A program made the position numbers and the translations under genes. Of a DNA stretch of 64,000 bases, positions 3,730-62,639 are shown piece by piece. The stretch is from positions 1 through 64,000 of IMG/VR virus record IMGVR_UViG_3300042473_001540, one strand, 5' to 3'. Within the stretch, counting starts at the first letter, position 1. Every line of letters starts with the position of its first letter. The notes under the pieces are model-generated. The model worked only from the letters and a program-made list of their open reading frames with translations. It was not told the origin of the DNA and ran no database searches.

Positions 3730-3780
3730 CATAATCCCCATGTCTTGCTATATAAGAGAATAGCCAAAAGGATAGACCTT
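3726..3780 (+). promoter_or_regulatory. Sigma70 promoter plus leader hairpin motif
   Basis: TTGACA-17-TATATA, then AAAAGGATAGACCTT at 3766-3780. Confidence 0.7.
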
Positions 3781-3808
3781 GCGGCAGATTGAGCAAAGGA
3801 TTTTTGCG

Positions 3809-4879
3809 ATGAACAAAGCTGACCTAGGAATCTTTATCGGAAGGTTTTCTCCTTACCATTCAGGTCACCACCATGTGGTAACTGAAGCACTCAAGCACGC
3901 AGACAATTTGGTGATTTTGGTGGGCAGTGCCCGCAGTCCGCGCAGTTATCGTGTGCCGTTTACCTTTCAAGAACGGCGGGACATGATTGAAGGCAGCCTG
4001 CCTGCCGAGCTGAAAAACAGAGTGCGAGTTCTGCCTCTAGAGGACGCCACCTACAACGACAGCAAGTGGATCCACAATGTGCAGACGCTGGCTGCCCAAG
4101 GGGCGACGCTTTTTGGGCTTGACCCAGCCAAAGCCAAGATCACACTAGTGGGCCACAGCCGAGACAACACCAGCTATTACCTGAAACTGTTTCCTCAATG
4201 GAGCAATGTGGAGGTCAGCAGCTTCCGCGACATCAGCGGTACCAACATTCGCAACAGCTACTTCAGCAACATGGGCCACATGTGGGTGAGAGATGCAGAT
4301 GGCCACCAAGCAGGTGACCTGCCTCAGGATGCAGTGGTGACACCCTATGTGCAGAAGTTTCTCAGCAGTTTCCTTGATACTCCCAACCACAAGCTGATCC
4401 GTGACGAGTATGAGTTTGTGCTGAAGTACAAAAGCAGTTGGGCGGCTGCGCCTTACCCTGTGAATCTAGTGTGCGTAGACGCTGTGGTGATCAAAAGCGG
4501 ACATGTGCTAATGGTGGAACGTGGAGCAATGCCAGGGAAAGGCCAGCTTGCACTTCCTGGTGGATACCTAGATGTAACTGAGCGAGTAGTTGACGGGATG
4601 ATCCGTGAGCTGCGTGAGGAAACTCGGTTGAAAGTCCCAGCTCCGGTGCTTAAAGGCAGCATTGTCAAGAAGGAAGTTTTTGACGATCCTAATCGCAGCA
4701 GCCGAGGTCGAGTGCTCACAGTAGCTTATCTCATTGATCTTGGCACAGGTCCACTTGACACAGTCAAGGGCGGAGATGATGCGGCCTCAGCCAAATGGGT
4801 AGCCCTTAAAGATCTTCGGCCAGAAATCTGTTTTGAGGACCACTATCATTTAATCTCTGTACTAGTCGGGGCAATTTAG
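3809..4879 (+). CDS. nadM: Bifunctional NMN adenylyltransferase / ADP-ribose Nudix hydrolase
   Basis: FIGRFSPYHSGH (HxGH), SGTNIR, Nudix box GG...RELREET. Confidence 0.9.
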   Translation: MNKADLGIFIGRFSPYHSGHHHVVTEALKHADNLVILVGSARSPRSYRVPFTFQERRDMIEGSLPAELKNRVRVLPLEDATYNDSKWIHNVQTLAAQGATLFGLDPAKAKITLVGHSRDNTSYYLKLFPQWSNVEVSSFRDISGTNIRNSYFSNMGHMWVRDADGHQAGDLPQDAVVTPYVQKFLSSFLDTPNHKLIRDEYEFVLKYKSSWAAAPYPVNLVCVDAVVIKSGHVLMVERGAMPGKGQLALPGGYLDVTERVVDGMIRELREETRLKVPAPVLKGSIVKKEVFDDPNRSSRGRVLTVAYLIDLGTGPLDTVKGGDDAASAKWVALKDLRPEICFEDHYHLISVLVGAI

Positions 4880-7020: not shown

Positions 7021-7080
7021 TTGACGTAATTGGGCATCTAGCCTATAAATATGACACAGGAAAAGGATAGACCTTTTCCT
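7021..7080 (+). promoter_or_regulatory. Sigma70/late promoter plus leader hairpin motif
   Basis: TTGACG-17-TATAAATA, then AGGAAAAGG-ATAGA-CCTTTTCCT. Confidence 0.7.
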
Positions 7081-7107
7081 TCACATACTGAACAAGGGAG
7101 ACTTGTT

Positions 7108-8517
7108 ATGTTCAATTACGATAGCGTCATTCTTGACGTCGACAGCTACAAATTCAGCCATCCGTGGCAACTTCCCCCAAACACCACACACATTCACAGC
7201 TACGTAGAAAGTCGCGGCGGACGCTTCCCTCGCACACTGTTTTACGGGCTCCAAATGTGGCTCAAGCGTCGGCTGGTGACTCCAGTGACCATGAGCGACG
7301 TGGACGAGGCTGCTGGATTGGCAGCCGCACACATGGTGCCTTTCCATCGGGAAGGCTGGGAATACATTGTGCGTGAGCACCAGGGCCGGTTGCCAGTAGA
7401 GATTCGAGCAGTGCCCGAAGGCATGGTGATCCCCACTCACAACGTGCTAGCCACTGTGGTGAACACCGATCCCAATGTGCCCTGGCTCACTAGCTTCCTA
7501 GAGACAGCTCTACTCCGTGCTGTTTGGTACCCCACCACAGTGGCCACACTCAGCTGGCATGCCAAGCAGACCATTCGAGCTGCACTGGGGAAGAGCAGCG
7601 ACAACCCCGAAGGCGAGCTTCTGTTTCGACTGCACGACTTTGGCGCTCGTGGCGTCAGCAGCGATGAAAGCGCTCAGCTGGGTGGCAGTGCTCACCTAGT
7701 GAACTTCCGAGGCACCGACACTGTTGCAGCCCTCCTTGCAGCCCGACGCTACTACACCGAGGCCATGGCAGGGTTTAGCATTCCGGCAGCAGAGCACAGC
7801 ACCATCACCAGTTGGGGTCGCGATGGCGAAGCTGAGGCCTATGGCAACATGCTCAAGCAGTTTGCCCGGCCAGGCAGCATCCTTGCAGTGGTGAGCGACA
7901 GCTACGACATCATGAACGCGGTCAACCACATCTGGGGCGAAACACTGCGAGACCGTGTGCTAGACAGTGGGGCCACCCTTGTGATTCGTCCCGACAGCGG
8001 TGATCCAGTTGTGGTGCCAGTTGATGTGGTTGAGGCACTTGGTGAGCGGTTTGGCTACACCGTCAACAGCAAGGGCTACAAGGTGCTGAACAAGAGTGTG
8101 CGTGTGATCCAGGGCGATGGCATGAACATTGACAGCATCAAAACCCTGTATGACAACCTCACAGCACGCGGCTGGAGTGCAGAAAACGTGGCTGTGGGCA
8201 TGGGCGGCCAACTCTTGCAAGGTATTACTCGCGACACCAATCGATTTGCGATGAAAGCTTCAGCTGCCTGTATTGATGGGGAATGGCGCGAGGTATATAA
8301 GGATCCTATTACAGACAAAGGAAAAACATCCAAGAAAGGTAAAGTTACCCTTTGGCAGTCAGGTAACCAATTTCAAACAAGCGTTAACACTCCTCTACGC
8401 GGTCTTGAGAATGGTGTGGTGTGGACCGACGTTCTGCAGACAGTCTACCGGAATGGACGCCTTCTCATTGATCAATCATTCCAGGACATTAGAGATCGAT
8501 CTGAGAAAGTCTTTTAA
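7108..8517 (+). CDS. nadV: Nicotinamide phosphoribosyltransferase (NAMPT)
   Basis: DSYKFSH, LHDFGARG, SIPAAEHS, VSDSYD, IRPDSGDP, IQGDG motifs. Confidence 0.95.
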   Translation: MFNYDSVILDVDSYKFSHPWQLPPNTTHIHSYVESRGGRFPRTLFYGLQMWLKRRLVTPVTMSDVDEAAGLAAAHMVPFHREGWEYIVREHQGRLPVEIRAVPEGMVIPTHNVLATVVNTDPNVPWLTSFLETALLRAVWYPTTVATLSWHAKQTIRAALGKSSDNPEGELLFRLHDFGARGVSSDESAQLGGSAHLVNFRGTDTVAALLAARRYYTEAMAGFSIPAAEHSTITSWGRDGEAEAYGNMLKQFARPGSILAVVSDSYDIMNAVNHIWGETLRDRVLDSGATLVIRPDSGDPVVVPVDVVEALGERFGYTVNSKGYKVLNKSVRVIQGDGMNIDSIKTLYDNLTARGWSAENVAVGMGGQLLQGITRDTNRFAMKASAACIDGEWREVYKDPITDKGKTSKKGKVTLWQSGNQFQTSVNTPLRGLENGVVWTDVLQTVYRNGRLLIDQSFQDIRDRSEKVF

Positions 8518-11181: not shown

Positions 11182-12591
11182 ATGACACCCGCTACAACGA
11201 CAGCCAAAACTATTGAAAAATCCAGTGATATGGATGCAACCAAACTGTATCTCAAGCAGGTTGCCAAAAACAAGTTGCTTACACATCAGCAGGAAATTCA
11301 ATTTAGTCAACAAATTGAAAACAGCAAGAAAAACCTGCTCTTGAATCTGTTCTCTATTCCTATGGCAGTATGGCAGTTTGATACCAAGATTCAAGGTGTA
11401 GTAAAAGGGGAAATTGACAGCCACAGCATTTTTGACATTGAAGAAACAGAACTAGCCCCTCTGCTCACAAATCTAGCAAACATTCAACAGGATATTATGC
11501 TGTTAAGCACCAGCCCCAATAGTGAACTCTGTCAACGAGTGGCTGAAACCTGTTCTTCGCTGAGTTTCAAACTCAGCTTTTACGACAGCATGGTTCAGCC
11601 CTTCAACGACATGGTGAAAGACATTATTAGCGCACAAGGAGCTTACCTGCGCTTTGCACAAAGCAAAGGAGTCTCTCGTGAGTTGTTCCTAGCCGCATAC
11701 CAAAGCATGTCACAAGACAAAAATTGGCTGCGGTTCAAAACAGTTCACCAAGCCGAAGTGGAAAAGCATGAGTCGCAACTAGCAAGTTTTGTTGCCAACA
11801 CGGGTATGCCACTTGACACACTCCTTGAAAAATGCCGCCAGATTCGGCAAGAGCAAAAAAACAAGGACGAGGCAGTGGAGATTATGCTCAAGAGCAATCT
11901 TCGACTCGTGGTGAGTGTGGCAAAGAAATACACCAACATCAGTCAAACTCCCATTCTTGATCTCATTCAAGAAGGCAACATTGGTCTCTTGAAAGCTATT
12001 GAGAAGTTTGATTGGAAGATGGGATTTCGTTTCAGCACCTACGCCACTTGGTGGATCAAGCAGTGTGTGCTGAAAGCCTTGAATGAGCATCATCGTATCA
12101 TTCGTATCCCAGCTCACATGAGCGACCTTGCCAAGAAGGTAACGCGAGCACGAGCTGAGTTTGTAAATCACAATGGTTTTGAGCCCAGTGTGCAAGAAAT
12201 TGCAGAGATGCTGGAAATTGATGTGGAAAACGTAGACAAAGTCTACAGTGTTGCGCAGGGCACAATCTCTCTGGAAACGCCAATTGGCGGTGAAGAAGAT
12301 CAAACCATTGCACATCTTATTGAAGACACTGAAGGGGTGAATGCGTTTAACCTCTTGGCTGAGGCTGACAGCGCATATGCAGTGTCAGAGGTCTTGAAAC
12401 ATCTCAGTCCCAAGGAAGAGCGTGTGATCAGGATGCGCTTTGGTATTGGTGTAAACGAACAAAGCACACTGGAAGACATTGGCAACAAATTTGGTGTCAC
12501 TCGTGAGCGTGTGCGCCAGATTGAAAGCAAAGCACTGGAAAAGCTCAAGAGTACGGAACTAGCTCAGAAGCTGCAAGAAGCTTTTACCTAA
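11182..12591 (+). CDS. rpoD: RNA polymerase sigma70 factor (RpoD-like)
   Basis: NLRLVVSVAKKY, DLIQEGNIGLLKAIEKFD, FSTYATWWI, TRERVRQIE. Confidence 0.9.
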   Translation: MTPATTTAKTIEKSSDMDATKLYLKQVAKNKLLTHQQEIQFSQQIENSKKNLLLNLFSIPMAVWQFDTKIQGVVKGEIDSHSIFDIEETELAPLLTNLANIQQDIMLLSTSPNSELCQRVAETCSSLSFKLSFYDSMVQPFNDMVKDIISAQGAYLRFAQSKGVSRELFLAAYQSMSQDKNWLRFKTVHQAEVEKHESQLASFVANTGMPLDTLLEKCRQIRQEQKNKDEAVEIMLKSNLRLVVSVAKKYTNISQTPILDLIQEGNIGLLKAIEKFDWKMGFRFSTYATWWIKQCVLKALNEHHRIIRIPAHMSDLAKKVTRARAEFVNHNGFEPSVQEIAEMLEIDVENVDKVYSVAQGTISLETPIGGEEDQTIAHLIEDTEGVNAFNLLAEADSAYAVSEVLKHLSPKEERVIRMRFGIGVNEQSTLEDIGNKFGVTRERVRQIESKALEKLKSTELAQKLQEAFT

Positions 12592-14472: not shown

Positions 14473-18564
<4,092 letters not shown>

Positions 18565-25024: not shown

Positions 25025-25133
25025 TTGCCATCGAGGTTGGAACAGCCTCCCAACACACCATGAGAATGGTAACTAGCCGGCAGCAATCACCTAGCTGGTG
25101 AAGAAATCCGGAAGTGGCATCCGGCGATGGCGA
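25025..25133 (+). ncRNA. Candidate multibranch RNA
   Basis: TTGCCATCG/CGATGGCGA closing stem with four internal hairpins. Confidence 0.45.
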
Positions 25134-26379: not shown

Positions 26380-26449
26380 CCCAGGTTGAACCAGCGTTCC
26401 ACCGGCCTTCATACGGCTGAGTGAAAAGGTGCAACTCCTTTGCCTGGGA
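26380..26449 (+). tRNA. tRNA with CAT anticodon (Met-type), atypical
   Basis: CGGCC-TTCATAC-GGCTG; short D arm; T loop TGCAACT. Confidence 0.65.
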
Positions 26450-26537
26450 CTAAAAATATAAGTTGACTGACCCCTCAACGCACTTATAATCTGTGTATTG
26501 ATAGAGAGCGGTGAGGTAGAGACAAAAATAGAGATTA

Positions 26538-26614
26538 TCCCGGACGGGCGCAAGGTGTGCCAGCAGATTGTTAATCTGTTCATCAGGAAAGTTCGATTCT
26601 TTCTCCGGGAGCCA
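26538..26614 (+). tRNA. tRNA-Asn(GTT)
   Basis: GCAGA-TTGTTAA-TCTGT; G73; CCA. Confidence 0.85.
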
Positions 26615-26622
26615 AAAACAAG

Positions 26623-26765
26623 ATAGGACTGACGATGGTCCTCCCTCAAGGGTTCGAGTACATGGTTGGGTTAGCGTCCAACTTGCAGCAATGTGCGAAA
26701 TCACAGCGTCCTCTGGAGCTGGGTGTAATGCCCAGATAGGCAGCCGGTTAAGCCGAACAAGCCGG
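26623..26765 (+). ncRNA. Unknown structured RNA, copy 1
   Basis: Diverged repeat of 26898-27042 with compensatory stem changes. Confidence 0.7.
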
Positions 26766-26897
26766 TATATCATACGCAGACACGGCGCTGCATGGTTGCT
26801 ACAAGGAACATTTTGAGAGAATGGTGTGTAGGGATAGACAAGCGCGACGCCCAGGGTTGGCCAACTTATGAGACGTGAACCGTTTCCGCACCAGCAA

Positions 26898-27042
26898 ATA
26901 GGACTGCCCATGGTCCTCCTGAAAAGGTTTGAGAACATGCCTGGAGTTTATCGCCTAGGTAGTAACAATGTTTGAAATTTACAGAGGTCTCTGGTGCTAC
27001 GTGTAACTCGTAGATAGTCAGCCGGTTAAGACGAAAAGCCGG
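26898..27042 (+). ncRNA. Unknown structured RNA, copy 2
   Basis: See copy 1. Confidence 0.7.
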
Positions 27043-27126
27043 AGTATTTGTTGTTACCTACTCTTTACTGGGGTGTCATTCAAGTCTAGAGACGTGTGCA
27101 GCCAGCGTCAAACTATAAATATCCTT

Positions 27127-27489
27127 ATGTTGATATTTGAAGTTTTGGCGCCAGCGAACACAAGACTGGAATTGGGAAAACAACTACAAAGTATTTTAGA
27201 TGCTGTGCGTGGTCCAGAAAACAGCCGGGTCAAGTTAACCAAACATCTTCTAGATAAAATGTTACAATACAATATTCGTGCCAGTAATGTTGCAGCTATG
27301 GTAAAAAAAGCTTTTCGATTCCACAATCGCCCGTTGGCTGAACTGGGAACAAACAACAGAATCATATTGCGGAAAACAGATAAAACTGGCTTGGTGGTAG
27401 TCAAAAACACACACGGTGATTATGTGCTGGCTACTATTGACCCCAATTTGTATAACGTTAAAAATCCCAGTCCAGAACTGCGTGTGTAG
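27127..27489 (+). CDS. Hypothetical protein
   Basis: TATAAATA immediately upstream. Confidence 0.6.
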   Translation: MLIFEVLAPANTRLELGKQLQSILDAVRGPENSRVKLTKHLLDKMLQYNIRASNVAAMVKKAFRFHNRPLAELGTNNRIILRKTDKTGLVVVKNTHGDYVLATIDPNLYNVKNPSPELRV

Positions 27490-40124: not shown

Positions 40125-40248
40125 GGATCCGTGGTCTAATTGGATAAGGCAAGAGCCTTCCGGTCCCGCAGGTAGCATTCAAGGTTCGAATCCTTGGGGA
40201 CCGCTCCTAAGCTCTTCGATGGGGGTTCGAATCCCTCCGGGTCCGCCA
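40125..40248 (+). tRNA. tRNA-Arg (probably TCT) with 47-nt tRNA-mimic insertion in anticodon
   Basis: GGATCCG/CGGGTCC-GCCA; AGAGC/GCTCT stem; two TTCGAAT T arms. Confidence 0.8.
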
Positions 40249-47192: not shown

Positions 47193-47266
47193 GGCCCCAT
47201 AAGACAAAGGTAGTCAGCTGGACTCTAAATCCAGTGGTGTGAGTTCAAATCTCACTGGTGCCACCA
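47193..47266 (+). tRNA. Amber suppressor tRNA (CTA)
   Basis: CTGGA-CTCTAAA-TCCAG; TTCAAAT; ACCA; own TTGACG-17-TATACA promoter. Confidence 0.85.

Positions 47267-60395: not shown

Positions 60396-62638
<2,243 letters not shown>

Positions 62639-62639
<1 letters not shown>

What the first reader, a model, noticed from the sequence alone, without database searches (positions are those of the whole stretch)
26623..27042. Two diverged copies of an unknown ~145-nt RNA with built-in covariation
Seen: copies at 26623-26765 and 26898-27042 keep linkers (ATAGGACTG, ATGGTCCTCC, GAAAT, GTGTAA, AGATAG.CAGCCGGTTAAG.CGAA..AGCCGG) while stems change in compensating pairs: CTGGG/CCCAG vs CTACG/CGTAG, GTTGG/CCAAC vs CCTGG/CTAGG, GTACAT/ATGTGC vs GAACAT/ATGTTT, CCC/GGG vs CCT/AGG. 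The spacer holds a further TGGTGTG...CGCACCA closed element. This is direct evidence of selection on RNA structure; I do not recognise the family.
Basis: seen in the sequence. Interest (0 to 1): 0.7.

Follow-up and report, generated by a model that had tools for sequence, protein, structure and literature searches.

The report
New structured RNA in phage tRNA arrays
The two repeats are real copies of a previously undescribed, ~150-nucleotide, pseudoknotted RNA that sits among the tRNA genes of uncultured giant lake phages; its fold is strongly supported by compensating mutations, but what it does is still unknown.

Summary
Confirmed. Window 26622-26766 and 26897-27043 are two diverged copies (74% identity) of one RNA. 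They lie on the tRNA strand, just after tRNA-Asn and a consensus sigma-70-type promoter.

Pattern scans and a covariance model found nine more distinct copies in six other freshwater phage contigs. All sit inside tRNA gene arrays, and some are tandem (three copies in L002; a long and a short copy in L041).

Across 11 distinct sequences, 20 of 31 modelled pairs show changes on both sides, and 0 of 500 shuffles reach that. The fold has:
- an invariant 4-bp hairpin (P1) whose loop pairs with a downstream ACAG-NGGC stretch (a pseudoknot or kissing loop, itself covarying);
- a GNRA-capped P2;
- a P3/P3a arm with a conserved 7-nt bulge;
- two 3' hairpins with conserved loops.

There is no Rfam 15 match (E up to 10), no blastn match in GenBank phages, and no true hit in the GTDB genomes.

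Phage T4's species 1 and 2 RNAs are the closest analogue in position, but the model does not match them.

No RNA sequencing run was listed, so expression, processing and function are all inferred. My best guess is a stable trans-acting RNA cut out of tRNA transcripts. A new self-cleaving ribozyme is the main rival.

The parts
26463..26490 (+). Sigma-70-type promoter-like site (TTGACT, 16 nt, TATAAT; 11 of 12) upstream of tRNA-Asn and both copies
   Evidence: a consensus match only, transcription not shown
26538..26614 (+). tRNA-Asn (GTT) with encoded CCA, ending 11 nt before P1 of copy 1
   Evidence: ARAGORN
26622..26766 (+). Copy 1 of the RNA (whole unit)
   Evidence: R1 model 137.1 bits, E 3e-37; 81% identical to the copy in L046, 74% to copy 2
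26626..26641 (+). Copy 1 P1 hairpin: GGAC (26626-29), 8-nt loop L1 (26630-37), GTCC (26638-41). The stem is invariant in all 11 members
   Evidence: helix 1
26643..26652 (+). Copy 1 P2: CCC, TCAA loop, GGG
   Evidence: helix 3; third pair covaries CG/UA/AU/UG
26658..26696 (+). Copy 1 P3/P3a arm: P3 26658-62 with 26692-96; P3a 26664-69 with 26678-83; conserved 3' bulge 26684-90
   Evidence: helices 4, 5; the domain folds this way on its own
26703..26716 (+). Copy 1 ACAG + CGTC + CTGG segment. 26707-10 pairs with L1 26631-34 (pseudoknot); a possible 3-bp P4 is 26704-06 with 26713-15
   Evidence: helix 2
26719..26735 (+). Copy 1 P5 hairpin (CTGGG/CCCAG) with a GUAA-containing loop
26736..26765 (+). 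Copy 1 conserved ATAGGCAG linker and P6 hairpin (CCGG 26744-47 with CCGG 26762-65; loop carries the conserved AGCCGAA)
   Evidence: (helix 7)
26767..26896 (+). Spacer between the copies. No detectable RNA family, no relative elsewhere, not part of the family
26897..27043 (+). Copy 2 of the RNA (whole unit)
   Evidence: R1 model 125.4 bits, E 5e-34
26901..26927 (+). Copy 2 P1 (26901-04 with 26913-16; L1 26905-12) and P2 (26918-20, GAAA loop, 26925-27)
26933..26973 (+). Copy 2 P3/P3a arm: P3 26933-38 with 26968-73; P3a 26939-44 with 26955-60; bulge 26961-67
26981..26994 (+). Copy 2 ACAG + AGGT + CTGG. 26986-88 pairs with L1 26906-08
26997..27042 (+). Copy 2 P5 (26997-27001 with 27009-13), ATAGTCAG linker, P6 (27022-25 with 27039-42), followed by a T-rich tract

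Best explanation
These are two genes for a small (~150 nt), compactly folded non-coding RNA of a family not described before. The family is found in the tRNA gene arrays of uncultured giant freshwater phages. SHOWN: (1) The family has 11 distinct sequences in 7 contig groups. (2) The functional strand is the tRNA strand. (3) The fold is P1 with a loop-loop pseudoknot, a GNRA-capped P2, a P3/P3a arm with a conserved bulge, and P5 and P6 with conserved loops. (4) About 45 positions are invariant. (5) The RNA is always embedded among tRNA genes. (6) It often occurs in tandem, diverged copies. INFERRED: The RNA is transcribed from the promoter at 26463-26490 together with tRNA-Asn. It is freed from the polycistronic transcript by the host's tRNA-processing nucleases and accumulates as a stable discrete RNA, as the species 1 and 2 RNAs of phage T4 do. 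It then acts in trans: the invariant P1/pseudoknot core and the conserved loops form a rigid surface recognised by a protein or RNA partner concerned with tRNA or translation, for example as a decoy or scaffold during infection. The variable hairpin tips carry no information. The first 105 nt (P1 to the pseudoknot) form the essential domain, because the short copy in L041 keeps only that part and keeps the pseudoknot through a compensating change.
For: - Family and structure. Covariation is 0/500 shuffles and each domain folds alike on its own.
- Pseudoknot: pair 11-101 is CG x8, GU x2, AU x1; pair 13-99 is GC x3, CG x1, otherwise C/A. The short L041 copy turns the 3-4 bp contact into a perfect 5 bp one, GCCCG with CGGGC.
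- Strand: pair 48-70 is G-U in 10 of 11 members and several other G-U pairs occur. These would be C-A on the other strand.
- Context: every member lies in a tRNA array on the tRNA strand.
- Promoter: a promoter-like site lies upstream of tRNA-Asn.
- No conserved neighbouring protein gene, so a cis-regulator of one gene is unlikely.
- 3' end: P6 is followed by a T-rich tract at the last copy of some arrays (L002 copy C, L040, window copy 2), read directly. That fits a discrete RNA 3' end.
- T4 precedent: tRNA-Arg is followed by two tandem small stable RNAs of 119 and 139 nt.
Against: No RNA run could be listed, so expression, ends and stability are untested. No partner is identified. The trans-acting decoy or scaffold role is an argument from context and from the invariant stem sequence, not from data. 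Single-sequence folding energies are unremarkable. In other strains of the same phage, the tRNA-Asn plus copy 1 block is replaced by other sequence, so copy 1 at least is dispensable.
Confidence: 0.4

Rival explanations
1. A new class of self-cleaving ribozyme that cuts polycistronic tRNA-array transcripts into units, playing the part that hammerhead and HDV-like theta ribozymes play next to phage tRNAs.
For: Its size, pseudoknot, many invariant junction nucleotides, freedom from any particular gene, and head-to-tail arrays with 8-11 nt linkers are what small ribozymes look like. Three members start 5-14 nt after a tRNA 3' end. L002 has a hammerhead-like core (CUGAUGAG, CGAAAC, GUC) about 130 nt upstream of its array. 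Theta ribozymes show that phages do place ribozymes next to tRNAs (PMC10879173).
Against: No known ribozyme model matches. The distance to the upstream tRNA ranges from 5 nt to 145 nt or there is no tRNA upstream, whereas 77% of theta ribozymes are within 1 nt. Terminator-like T tracts after P6 in some members argue against cleavage, by the reasoning applied to skipping-rope RNA in PMC5737381. The hammerhead-like element scores only 19.7 bits against a cutoff of 48.5. No cleavage site can be named.
Confidence: 0.25
2. An RNA that assembles with itself into a homo-oligomer through the L1 / ACAG-NGGC loop contact made between molecules, on the model of phi29 pRNA or the ROOL/GOLLD cages.
For: In the window the two copies carry mutually incompatible loop pairs: GACG with CGTC in copy 1, and GCC with GGT in copy 2. 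Specificity between assemblies would favour exactly that. ROOL and GOLLD also lie near phage tRNAs (PMC5737381) and are reported to form RNA-only complexes (title and abstract of bioRxiv 10.1101/2024.12.08.627333).
Against: The three L002 copies share identical loops. A 3-5 bp contact is equally well explained within one molecule. There is no similarity to ROOL, GOLLD or pRNA. It cannot be tested here; the complex tool refuses RNA-only jobs.
Confidence: 0.08
3. A cis-acting riboswitch or leader (tandem aptamers) controlling the downstream ORF 27073-27489.
For: Tandem aptamers are known for riboswitches. Copy 2 ends about 30 nt before an ORF. The number of conserved nucleotides is riboswitch-like.
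Against: What follows differs in every locus: tRNA-Ile in L047, another copy in L002, unrelated or no ORFs elsewhere. The downstream ORF has no Pfam family.
Confidence: 0.05
4. A Y-RNA-like partner of a phage Ro60 (TROVE) protein.
For: The 376-kb phage G001, which has one copy, encodes a TROVE protein. The invariant GGUCC of P1 recalls, from my memory of metazoan Y RNAs, the Ro-binding helix.
Against: That TROVE gene has its own Y-like stem about 300 nt upstream and lies 91 kb from the RNA. No TROVE gene is present in the 310 kb held for the window's phage. The RNA has no terminal 5'/3' stem. No Y-RNA family is among the Rfam matches at E up to 10.
Confidence: 0.03
5. A DNA-level repeat (a recombination or protein-binding site) or a decaying duplicate with no RNA function.
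For: The tRNA-Asn plus copy 1 block is present or absent between strains, and homing endonuclease genes lie nearby in L002 and L040.
Against: Compensating changes in six helices, strand-specific G-U pairs, and conservation across phages that share almost nothing else nearby are not expected of a DNA site or a pseudogene.
Confidence: 0.02

Closest known systems
Phage T4 species 1 and species 2 RNAs (rnaC, rnaD)
   Same: Two tandem small stable RNAs (139 and 119 nt) lie directly after tRNA-Arg inside the T4 tRNA cluster, next to a homing endonuclease gene (segB); the record annotates them only as small, stable RNAs and names no function. Position, size, number and neighbourhood match the window's arrangement.
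   Different: No homology is detectable: model R1 with filters off gives nothing above 6 bits on the T4 region. The T4 pair are not copies of each other in any way I could see.
skipping-rope, ROOL and GOLLD RNAs (orphan structured RNAs of phages)
   Same: All are structured RNAs of unknown function. ROOL and GOLLD are often near tRNAs and in prophages (PMC5737381). A skipping-rope RNA lies 1.5 kb upstream in this same tRNA region.
   Different: Unrelated in sequence and fold (no Rfam match). From memory, ROOL and GOLLD are several times larger. Skipping-rope associates with particular nearby protein genes; this RNA does not.
HDV-like theta ribozymes and hammerheads next to phage tRNAs
   Same: Small pseudoknotted RNAs placed beside phage tRNA genes, and plausibly part of tRNA transcript processing (PMC10879173).
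   Different: Different topology: P1 here is a local hairpin, not the nested double pseudoknot (from my knowledge of the HDV fold). It is about twice the size, its spacing from tRNAs is variable, it comes from freshwater rather than gut phages, and it has no model match.
Bacterial and phage Y RNAs (YrlA)
   Same: Small structured RNAs, some phage-encoded, with tRNA-related features (PMC4201824).
   Different: Y RNAs have a long terminal stem and are encoded beside Ro60. This RNA has neither feature.

Membership tests
Any Rfam 15 family | cmscan score at or above the family's gathering score (or at least a consistent weak hit across members) | tested here: not met
   No match on any copy at E up to 10 in the window, L002, L047, L011 or L043
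tRNA / tmRNA | Cloverleaf detected by ARAGORN or the Rfam tRNA model | tested here: not met
   ARAGORN at default and at 75% thresholds, and Rfam, call only the flanking tRNA-Asn
HDV-like / theta ribozyme | Nested double-pseudoknot topology, with P1 closed by distant strands | tested here: not met
   The covariation-supported fold has a local P1 hairpin and a single loop-loop contact; no HDV-family hit. The defining topology itself is from my knowledge of the family.
HDV-like / theta ribozyme | Cleavage site within a few nt of a tRNA 3' end (77% within 1 nt; PMC10879173) | tested here: not met
   Gaps of 11, 5, 14 and 145 nt, or no upstream tRNA
Hammerhead ribozyme | Conserved CUGANGA and GAAA core around three stems | tested here: not met
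   Only copy 1 happens to read CTGACGA in L1; copy 2 and most members read CTGCCCA
Self-cleaving ribozyme (any class) | Site-specific self-scission | not testable with these tools
   Needs an in-vitro transcription and cleavage assay; no RNA reads available
T4 rnaC / rnaD | Sequence and structure homology | tested here: not met
   R1 with filters off over AF158101 66000-76000: best 5.7 bits, and not on rnaC or rnaD
T4 rnaC / rnaD | Small RNAs in tandem directly after a tRNA inside a phage tRNA cluster | tested here: met
   (this is context only; it shows analogy, not membership)
Y RNA / YrlA | Long stem formed by the 5' and 3' ends; gene beside a TROVE/Ro60 gene | tested here: not met
   No conserved closing stem in the flanks (read). 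TROVE is absent from G000 and G002, and in G001 it is 91 kb away with its own Y-like RNA
Riboswitch / cis-regulatory leader | Consistent position in the 5' UTR of a conserved gene family | tested here: not met
   Downstream features differ in every locus
Type III antitoxin RNA (ToxI-like) | Near-identical short tandem repeats (a few tens of nt, from my knowledge of ToxI) beside an endoribonuclease toxin gene | tested here: not met
   Units are ~150 nt and 74-84% identical; no conserved neighbouring gene

The most novel reading that the evidence does not exclude
The RNA is a new class of catalytic RNA: a self-cleaving, or otherwise tRNA-processing, ribozyme that giant freshwater phages insert between tRNA genes to mature their own tRNA arrays independently of host nucleases.
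Probability: 0.2. Interest if true: 0.85.

Novelty: new variant of a known kind. Interest (0 to 1): 0.6.

Why it matters
Phage tRNA clusters have carried unexplained small stable RNAs since the T4 species 1 and 2 RNAs were sequenced in the 1970s, a history I give from memory. ROOL, GOLLD and skipping-rope show that phages invest in elaborate RNAs whose roles are still unknown. This family adds a compact case that can be worked on. It is short enough to synthesise. It has an unusually clear covariation-supported fold, a testable pseudoknot, natural tandem arrays, and a natural truncated variant that marks the core domain. If it proves to be a ribozyme or a decoy in the tRNA-centred conflict between phages and bacterial defences, it would give a mechanism to a whole class of tRNA-cluster RNAs. 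If it is only a structural passenger, it is still a new RNA family for Rfam.

Tried and rejected
- One IMG/VR scan was wasted on a mis-registered pattern and returned only chance hits in coding sequence.
- Patterns allowing a covarying P1 stem, or built from the 3' half (ACAG..TAGG, or the P6 loop), found no new members in IMG/VR.
- The GTDB genome scan gave only coding-sequence chance matches in Clostridia and other MAGs.
- blastn in 'distant' mode with three different members against 50,697 GenBank phage records found no match.
- An RNA-run search listed none, so expression is untested.
- An all-against-all column covariation scan for tertiary pairs was swamped by the two-clade phylogeny and gave nothing usable.
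- A 5'/3' closing stem: copy 2 has an 8-bp possibility and copy 1 a 4-bp one, but the other members have none, so I rejected it as a family feature (read).
- A conserved partner protein: an all-against-all BLAST of ORFs around the loci found none adjacent. Pfam shows only homing endonucleases, NADAR, a phosphatase and a methyltransferase, scattered.
- RtcB is absent from G000, G001 and G002.
- Alternative genetic code: not indicated. TAG ends 20 of 63 long ORFs.
- The cultured-relative search with the phage sigma factor found nothing closer than 33-48% identity.

Full report
**The observation**

The window is part of a 180.7-kb IMG/VR virus record, estimated 44% complete. Lake-water metagenomes from many studies hold the same DNA.

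The stretch 21.7-47.3 kb carries 18 tRNA genes, all on the + strand. tRNA-Asn (26538-26614) lies behind a near-consensus promoter-like site at 26463-26490.

Eleven bases after the tRNA comes copy 1 (26622-26766). A 130-nt spacer follows, then copy 2 (26897-27043). The copies are 74% identical over aligned positions, and their differences include short indels that are not multiples of three.

One more exists: the loop of the first hairpin pairs with a stretch about 70 nt downstream (GACG with CGTC in copy 1; GCC with GGT in copy 2).

**Relatives**

I scanned for exact patterns built on the invariant 5' part. This found the same phage on three more IMG/VR contigs, plus new members:
- L002 (also held as L039 and L045) has three head-to-tail copies with 8-11 nt linkers.
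- L011 (also L037) lies in a 376-kb, 93%-complete phage, G001, and is a single copy there.
- L040, L046 and L047 have one copy each.
- L041 (also L043 and L044) has a full copy.

A covariance model (R1) recovered all of these at 119-147 bits. It also found a truncated 110-nt copy directly upstream of the full copy in L041 (55.9 bits).

That makes 11 distinct sequences in 7 contig groups. The window's phage recurs in lake-water metagenome runs; by their record names the other members come from JGI/ENA metagenome assemblies, whose environments I did not check individually.

Searches elsewhere were negative:
- The GTDB genome collection gave only chance hits in coding sequence.
- GenBank phages gave no blastn match with three different members as queries.
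- Looser or 3'-based patterns added nothing in IMG/VR.

Copy 1 is closer to the L046 copy (81%) than to its neighbour copy 2 (74%). The two are therefore old paralogues or exchanged cassettes, not a recent duplication.

**The fold**

On the model-based alignment A4, the structure I wrote down has seven helices:
- P1 is GGAC/GUCC and never varies.
- The 8-nt P1 loop makes a 3-5 bp contact with the stretch after an invariant ACAG. The pair types are CG, GU and AU at one position, and GC and CG against C/A at another.
- P2 is a 3-bp stem capped by GAAA, GCAA or UCAA.
- P3 is continued by P3a. They are separated by a conserved 7-nt bulge on the 3' side only (consensus close to GYARCAA).
- P5 has a loop containing GAAA or GUAA.
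- A conserved UAGGYAG linker follows.
- P6 has a loop carrying AGCYGA.

Overall, 89.5% of cells are paired and 20 of 31 pairs change on both sides. None of 500 shuffles reaches any of the five measures. Sliding the partners by 1-3 columns drops the covariation score from 0.473 to 0.03-0.10.

The alignment still mis-registers P3 in the two window rows and P5 in the window-type rows, so these figures are conservative. When the P3, P5 and P6 domains are cut out by their anchors and folded separately, 9 of the 10 full-length members give the same hairpins. The tenth was mis-parsed by my regular expression, not misfolded.

The short L041 copy keeps P1, P2, P3/P3a and the ACAG region but lacks P5 and P6. 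Its P1 loop has A changed to G, and the partner stretch has changed to make a perfect GCCCG/CGGGC contact. I read this as evidence that the 5' two-thirds is a domain under selection in its own right.

G-U pairs fix the functional strand as the tRNA strand; for example, pair 48-70 is G-U in 10 of 11 members.

**What it is not**

No Rfam 15 family matches any member at E up to 10. It is not a tRNA or tmRNA.

It does not have the HDV/theta topology or the theta ribozymes' fixed position at tRNA 3' ends (against gaps of 5-145 nt here). The hammerhead-like CTGACGA in the P1 loop of copy 1 is not conserved.

It is not a Y RNA. It has no terminal stem. The one phage with a Ro60/TROVE gene (G001) has a separate Y-like stem beside that gene, 91 kb from this RNA.

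It is not a leader for a conserved gene, because downstream features differ everywhere.

T4's rnaC and rnaD sit in the same kind of place but do not match the model.

**Context**

The neighbourhoods are typical tRNA-array accessory regions. They hold free-standing HNH and GIY-YIG homing endonuclease genes (L002, L040), plus NADAR, a phosphatase and small unknown ORFs.

Contigs of other lake runs laid on the region show strain differences:
- In run X20, tRNA-Asn plus copy 1 (26519-26770) is replaced by 106 other letters.
- In X24, a contig enters at 26771 from unrelated sequence.
- 26776-27300, which includes copy 2, is covered by contiguous pieces in three of the four runs and by two overlapping contigs in X23.

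A contig in X21 carries yet another variant of the family. Copy 1 therefore behaves as part of an exchangeable cassette.

**How it most likely works**

Shown: this is a real structured RNA family, on the tRNA strand, in tRNA arrays, with a pseudoknotted core and two GNRA-type loops.

Inferred: it is co-transcribed with tRNAs, released by tRNA-processing nucleases, accumulates as a stable RNA and acts in trans through its invariant core.

I put 0.4 on this trans-acting reading. Three things point to it:
- The P1 stem never covaries although every other stem does, which suggests sequence-specific recognition.
- There is no conserved cis partner.
- P6 is followed by T-rich tracts at the ends of some arrays.

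I put 0.25 on a new self-cleaving ribozyme. The features for it are the tandem arrays, the proximity to tRNA ends in three loci, and a hammerhead-like core 130 nt upstream in L002 that scores well below Rfam's threshold. The remaining rivals get small weights. No RNA run was listed, so none of the functional steps is tested.

**Verdict**

The family appears to be new to Rfam 15, to GenBank phages and to the literature I could search (searches found no description).

It belongs to the known phenomenon of orphan structured RNAs in phage tRNA clusters. That is why I rate it a new variant of a known kind rather than categorically new.

Noticed in passing
window 26519-26770: In lake run X20 a contig joins 26518 to 26771 with 106 other letters between, and in X24 a contig enters at 26771 from unrelated sequence. 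The block tRNA-Asn plus copy 1 is therefore present or absent between strains. 26776-27300, with copy 2, is covered in all four runs (by two overlapping contigs in X23).
   Followed up: partly
window 25026-25132: A skipping-rope RNA (RF02924, 44.5 bits, above its gathering score) lies in the same tRNA region, 1.5 kb upstream of copy 1.
   Followed up: no
window 40125-40245: A 121-nt tRNA-model hit carries an insertion of about 48 nt that itself contains a T-arm-like GGTTCGAATCC, so this may be an interrupted or composite tRNA. A similar 120-nt tRNA hit lies at L002 7013-7132.
   Followed up: no
window 47193-47266: A suppressor-type tRNA with anticodon CTA (ARAGORN labels it Pyl) is present. 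Even so, TAG ends 20 of 63 long ORFs, and code 11 gives normal coding density, so there is no sign of recoding in this window.
   Followed up: partly
window 26383-26473: A tRNA-like stretch closed by TCCCAGG/CCTGGGA, with a T-arm-like hairpin, lies just upstream of the promoter. It gives a weak hit to the Tymovirus tRNA-like element (23.4 bits, E 0.017, below threshold). ARAGORN does not call it on this strand.
   Followed up: partly
L002 about 7955-8008, minus strand: A type-I hammerhead-like core (CUGAUGAG, stem II, CGAAAC, stem III, GUC) lies about 130 nt upstream of the three-copy array. Rfam scores it only 19.7 bits on the type III model.
   Followed up: partly
G001:188399-189403 (L067 1501-2505) and L067 1130-1199: The 376-kb phage that carries one copy of the RNA encodes a Ro60/TROVE protein (104 bits). 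About 300 nt upstream of that gene is a Y-RNA-like stem (ACGGGCCGAAG paired with CUUGCCCGU; weak hit to the ceN72-3_ceN74-2 family, which I recall as nematode Y-RNA homologues; 28.8 bits).
   Followed up: partly
window 3779-4879, 7051-8517, 11182-12591: The phage encodes an NMNAT-Nudix fusion and a nicotinamide phosphoribosyltransferase (NAD salvage), plus a full-length RpoD-like sigma factor with regions 1.2 to 4. Two large collagen-repeat proteins lie at 14473-18555 and 60402-62639.
   Followed up: no
L002 8053-8475 and 6218-6850; L040 884-1462: Free-standing HNH and GIY-YIG (Seg-like) homing endonuclease genes flank the RNA arrays, much as segB sits in the T4 tRNA cluster.
   Followed up: no
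lake run X21, contig matching window 26898-26947: A 391-nt contig matches the 5' part of copy 2 with 8 differences, then continues with sequence resembling the P3a/P3 region of copy 1-type members. It is a further family variant that the exact-pattern scans missed.
   Followed up: no
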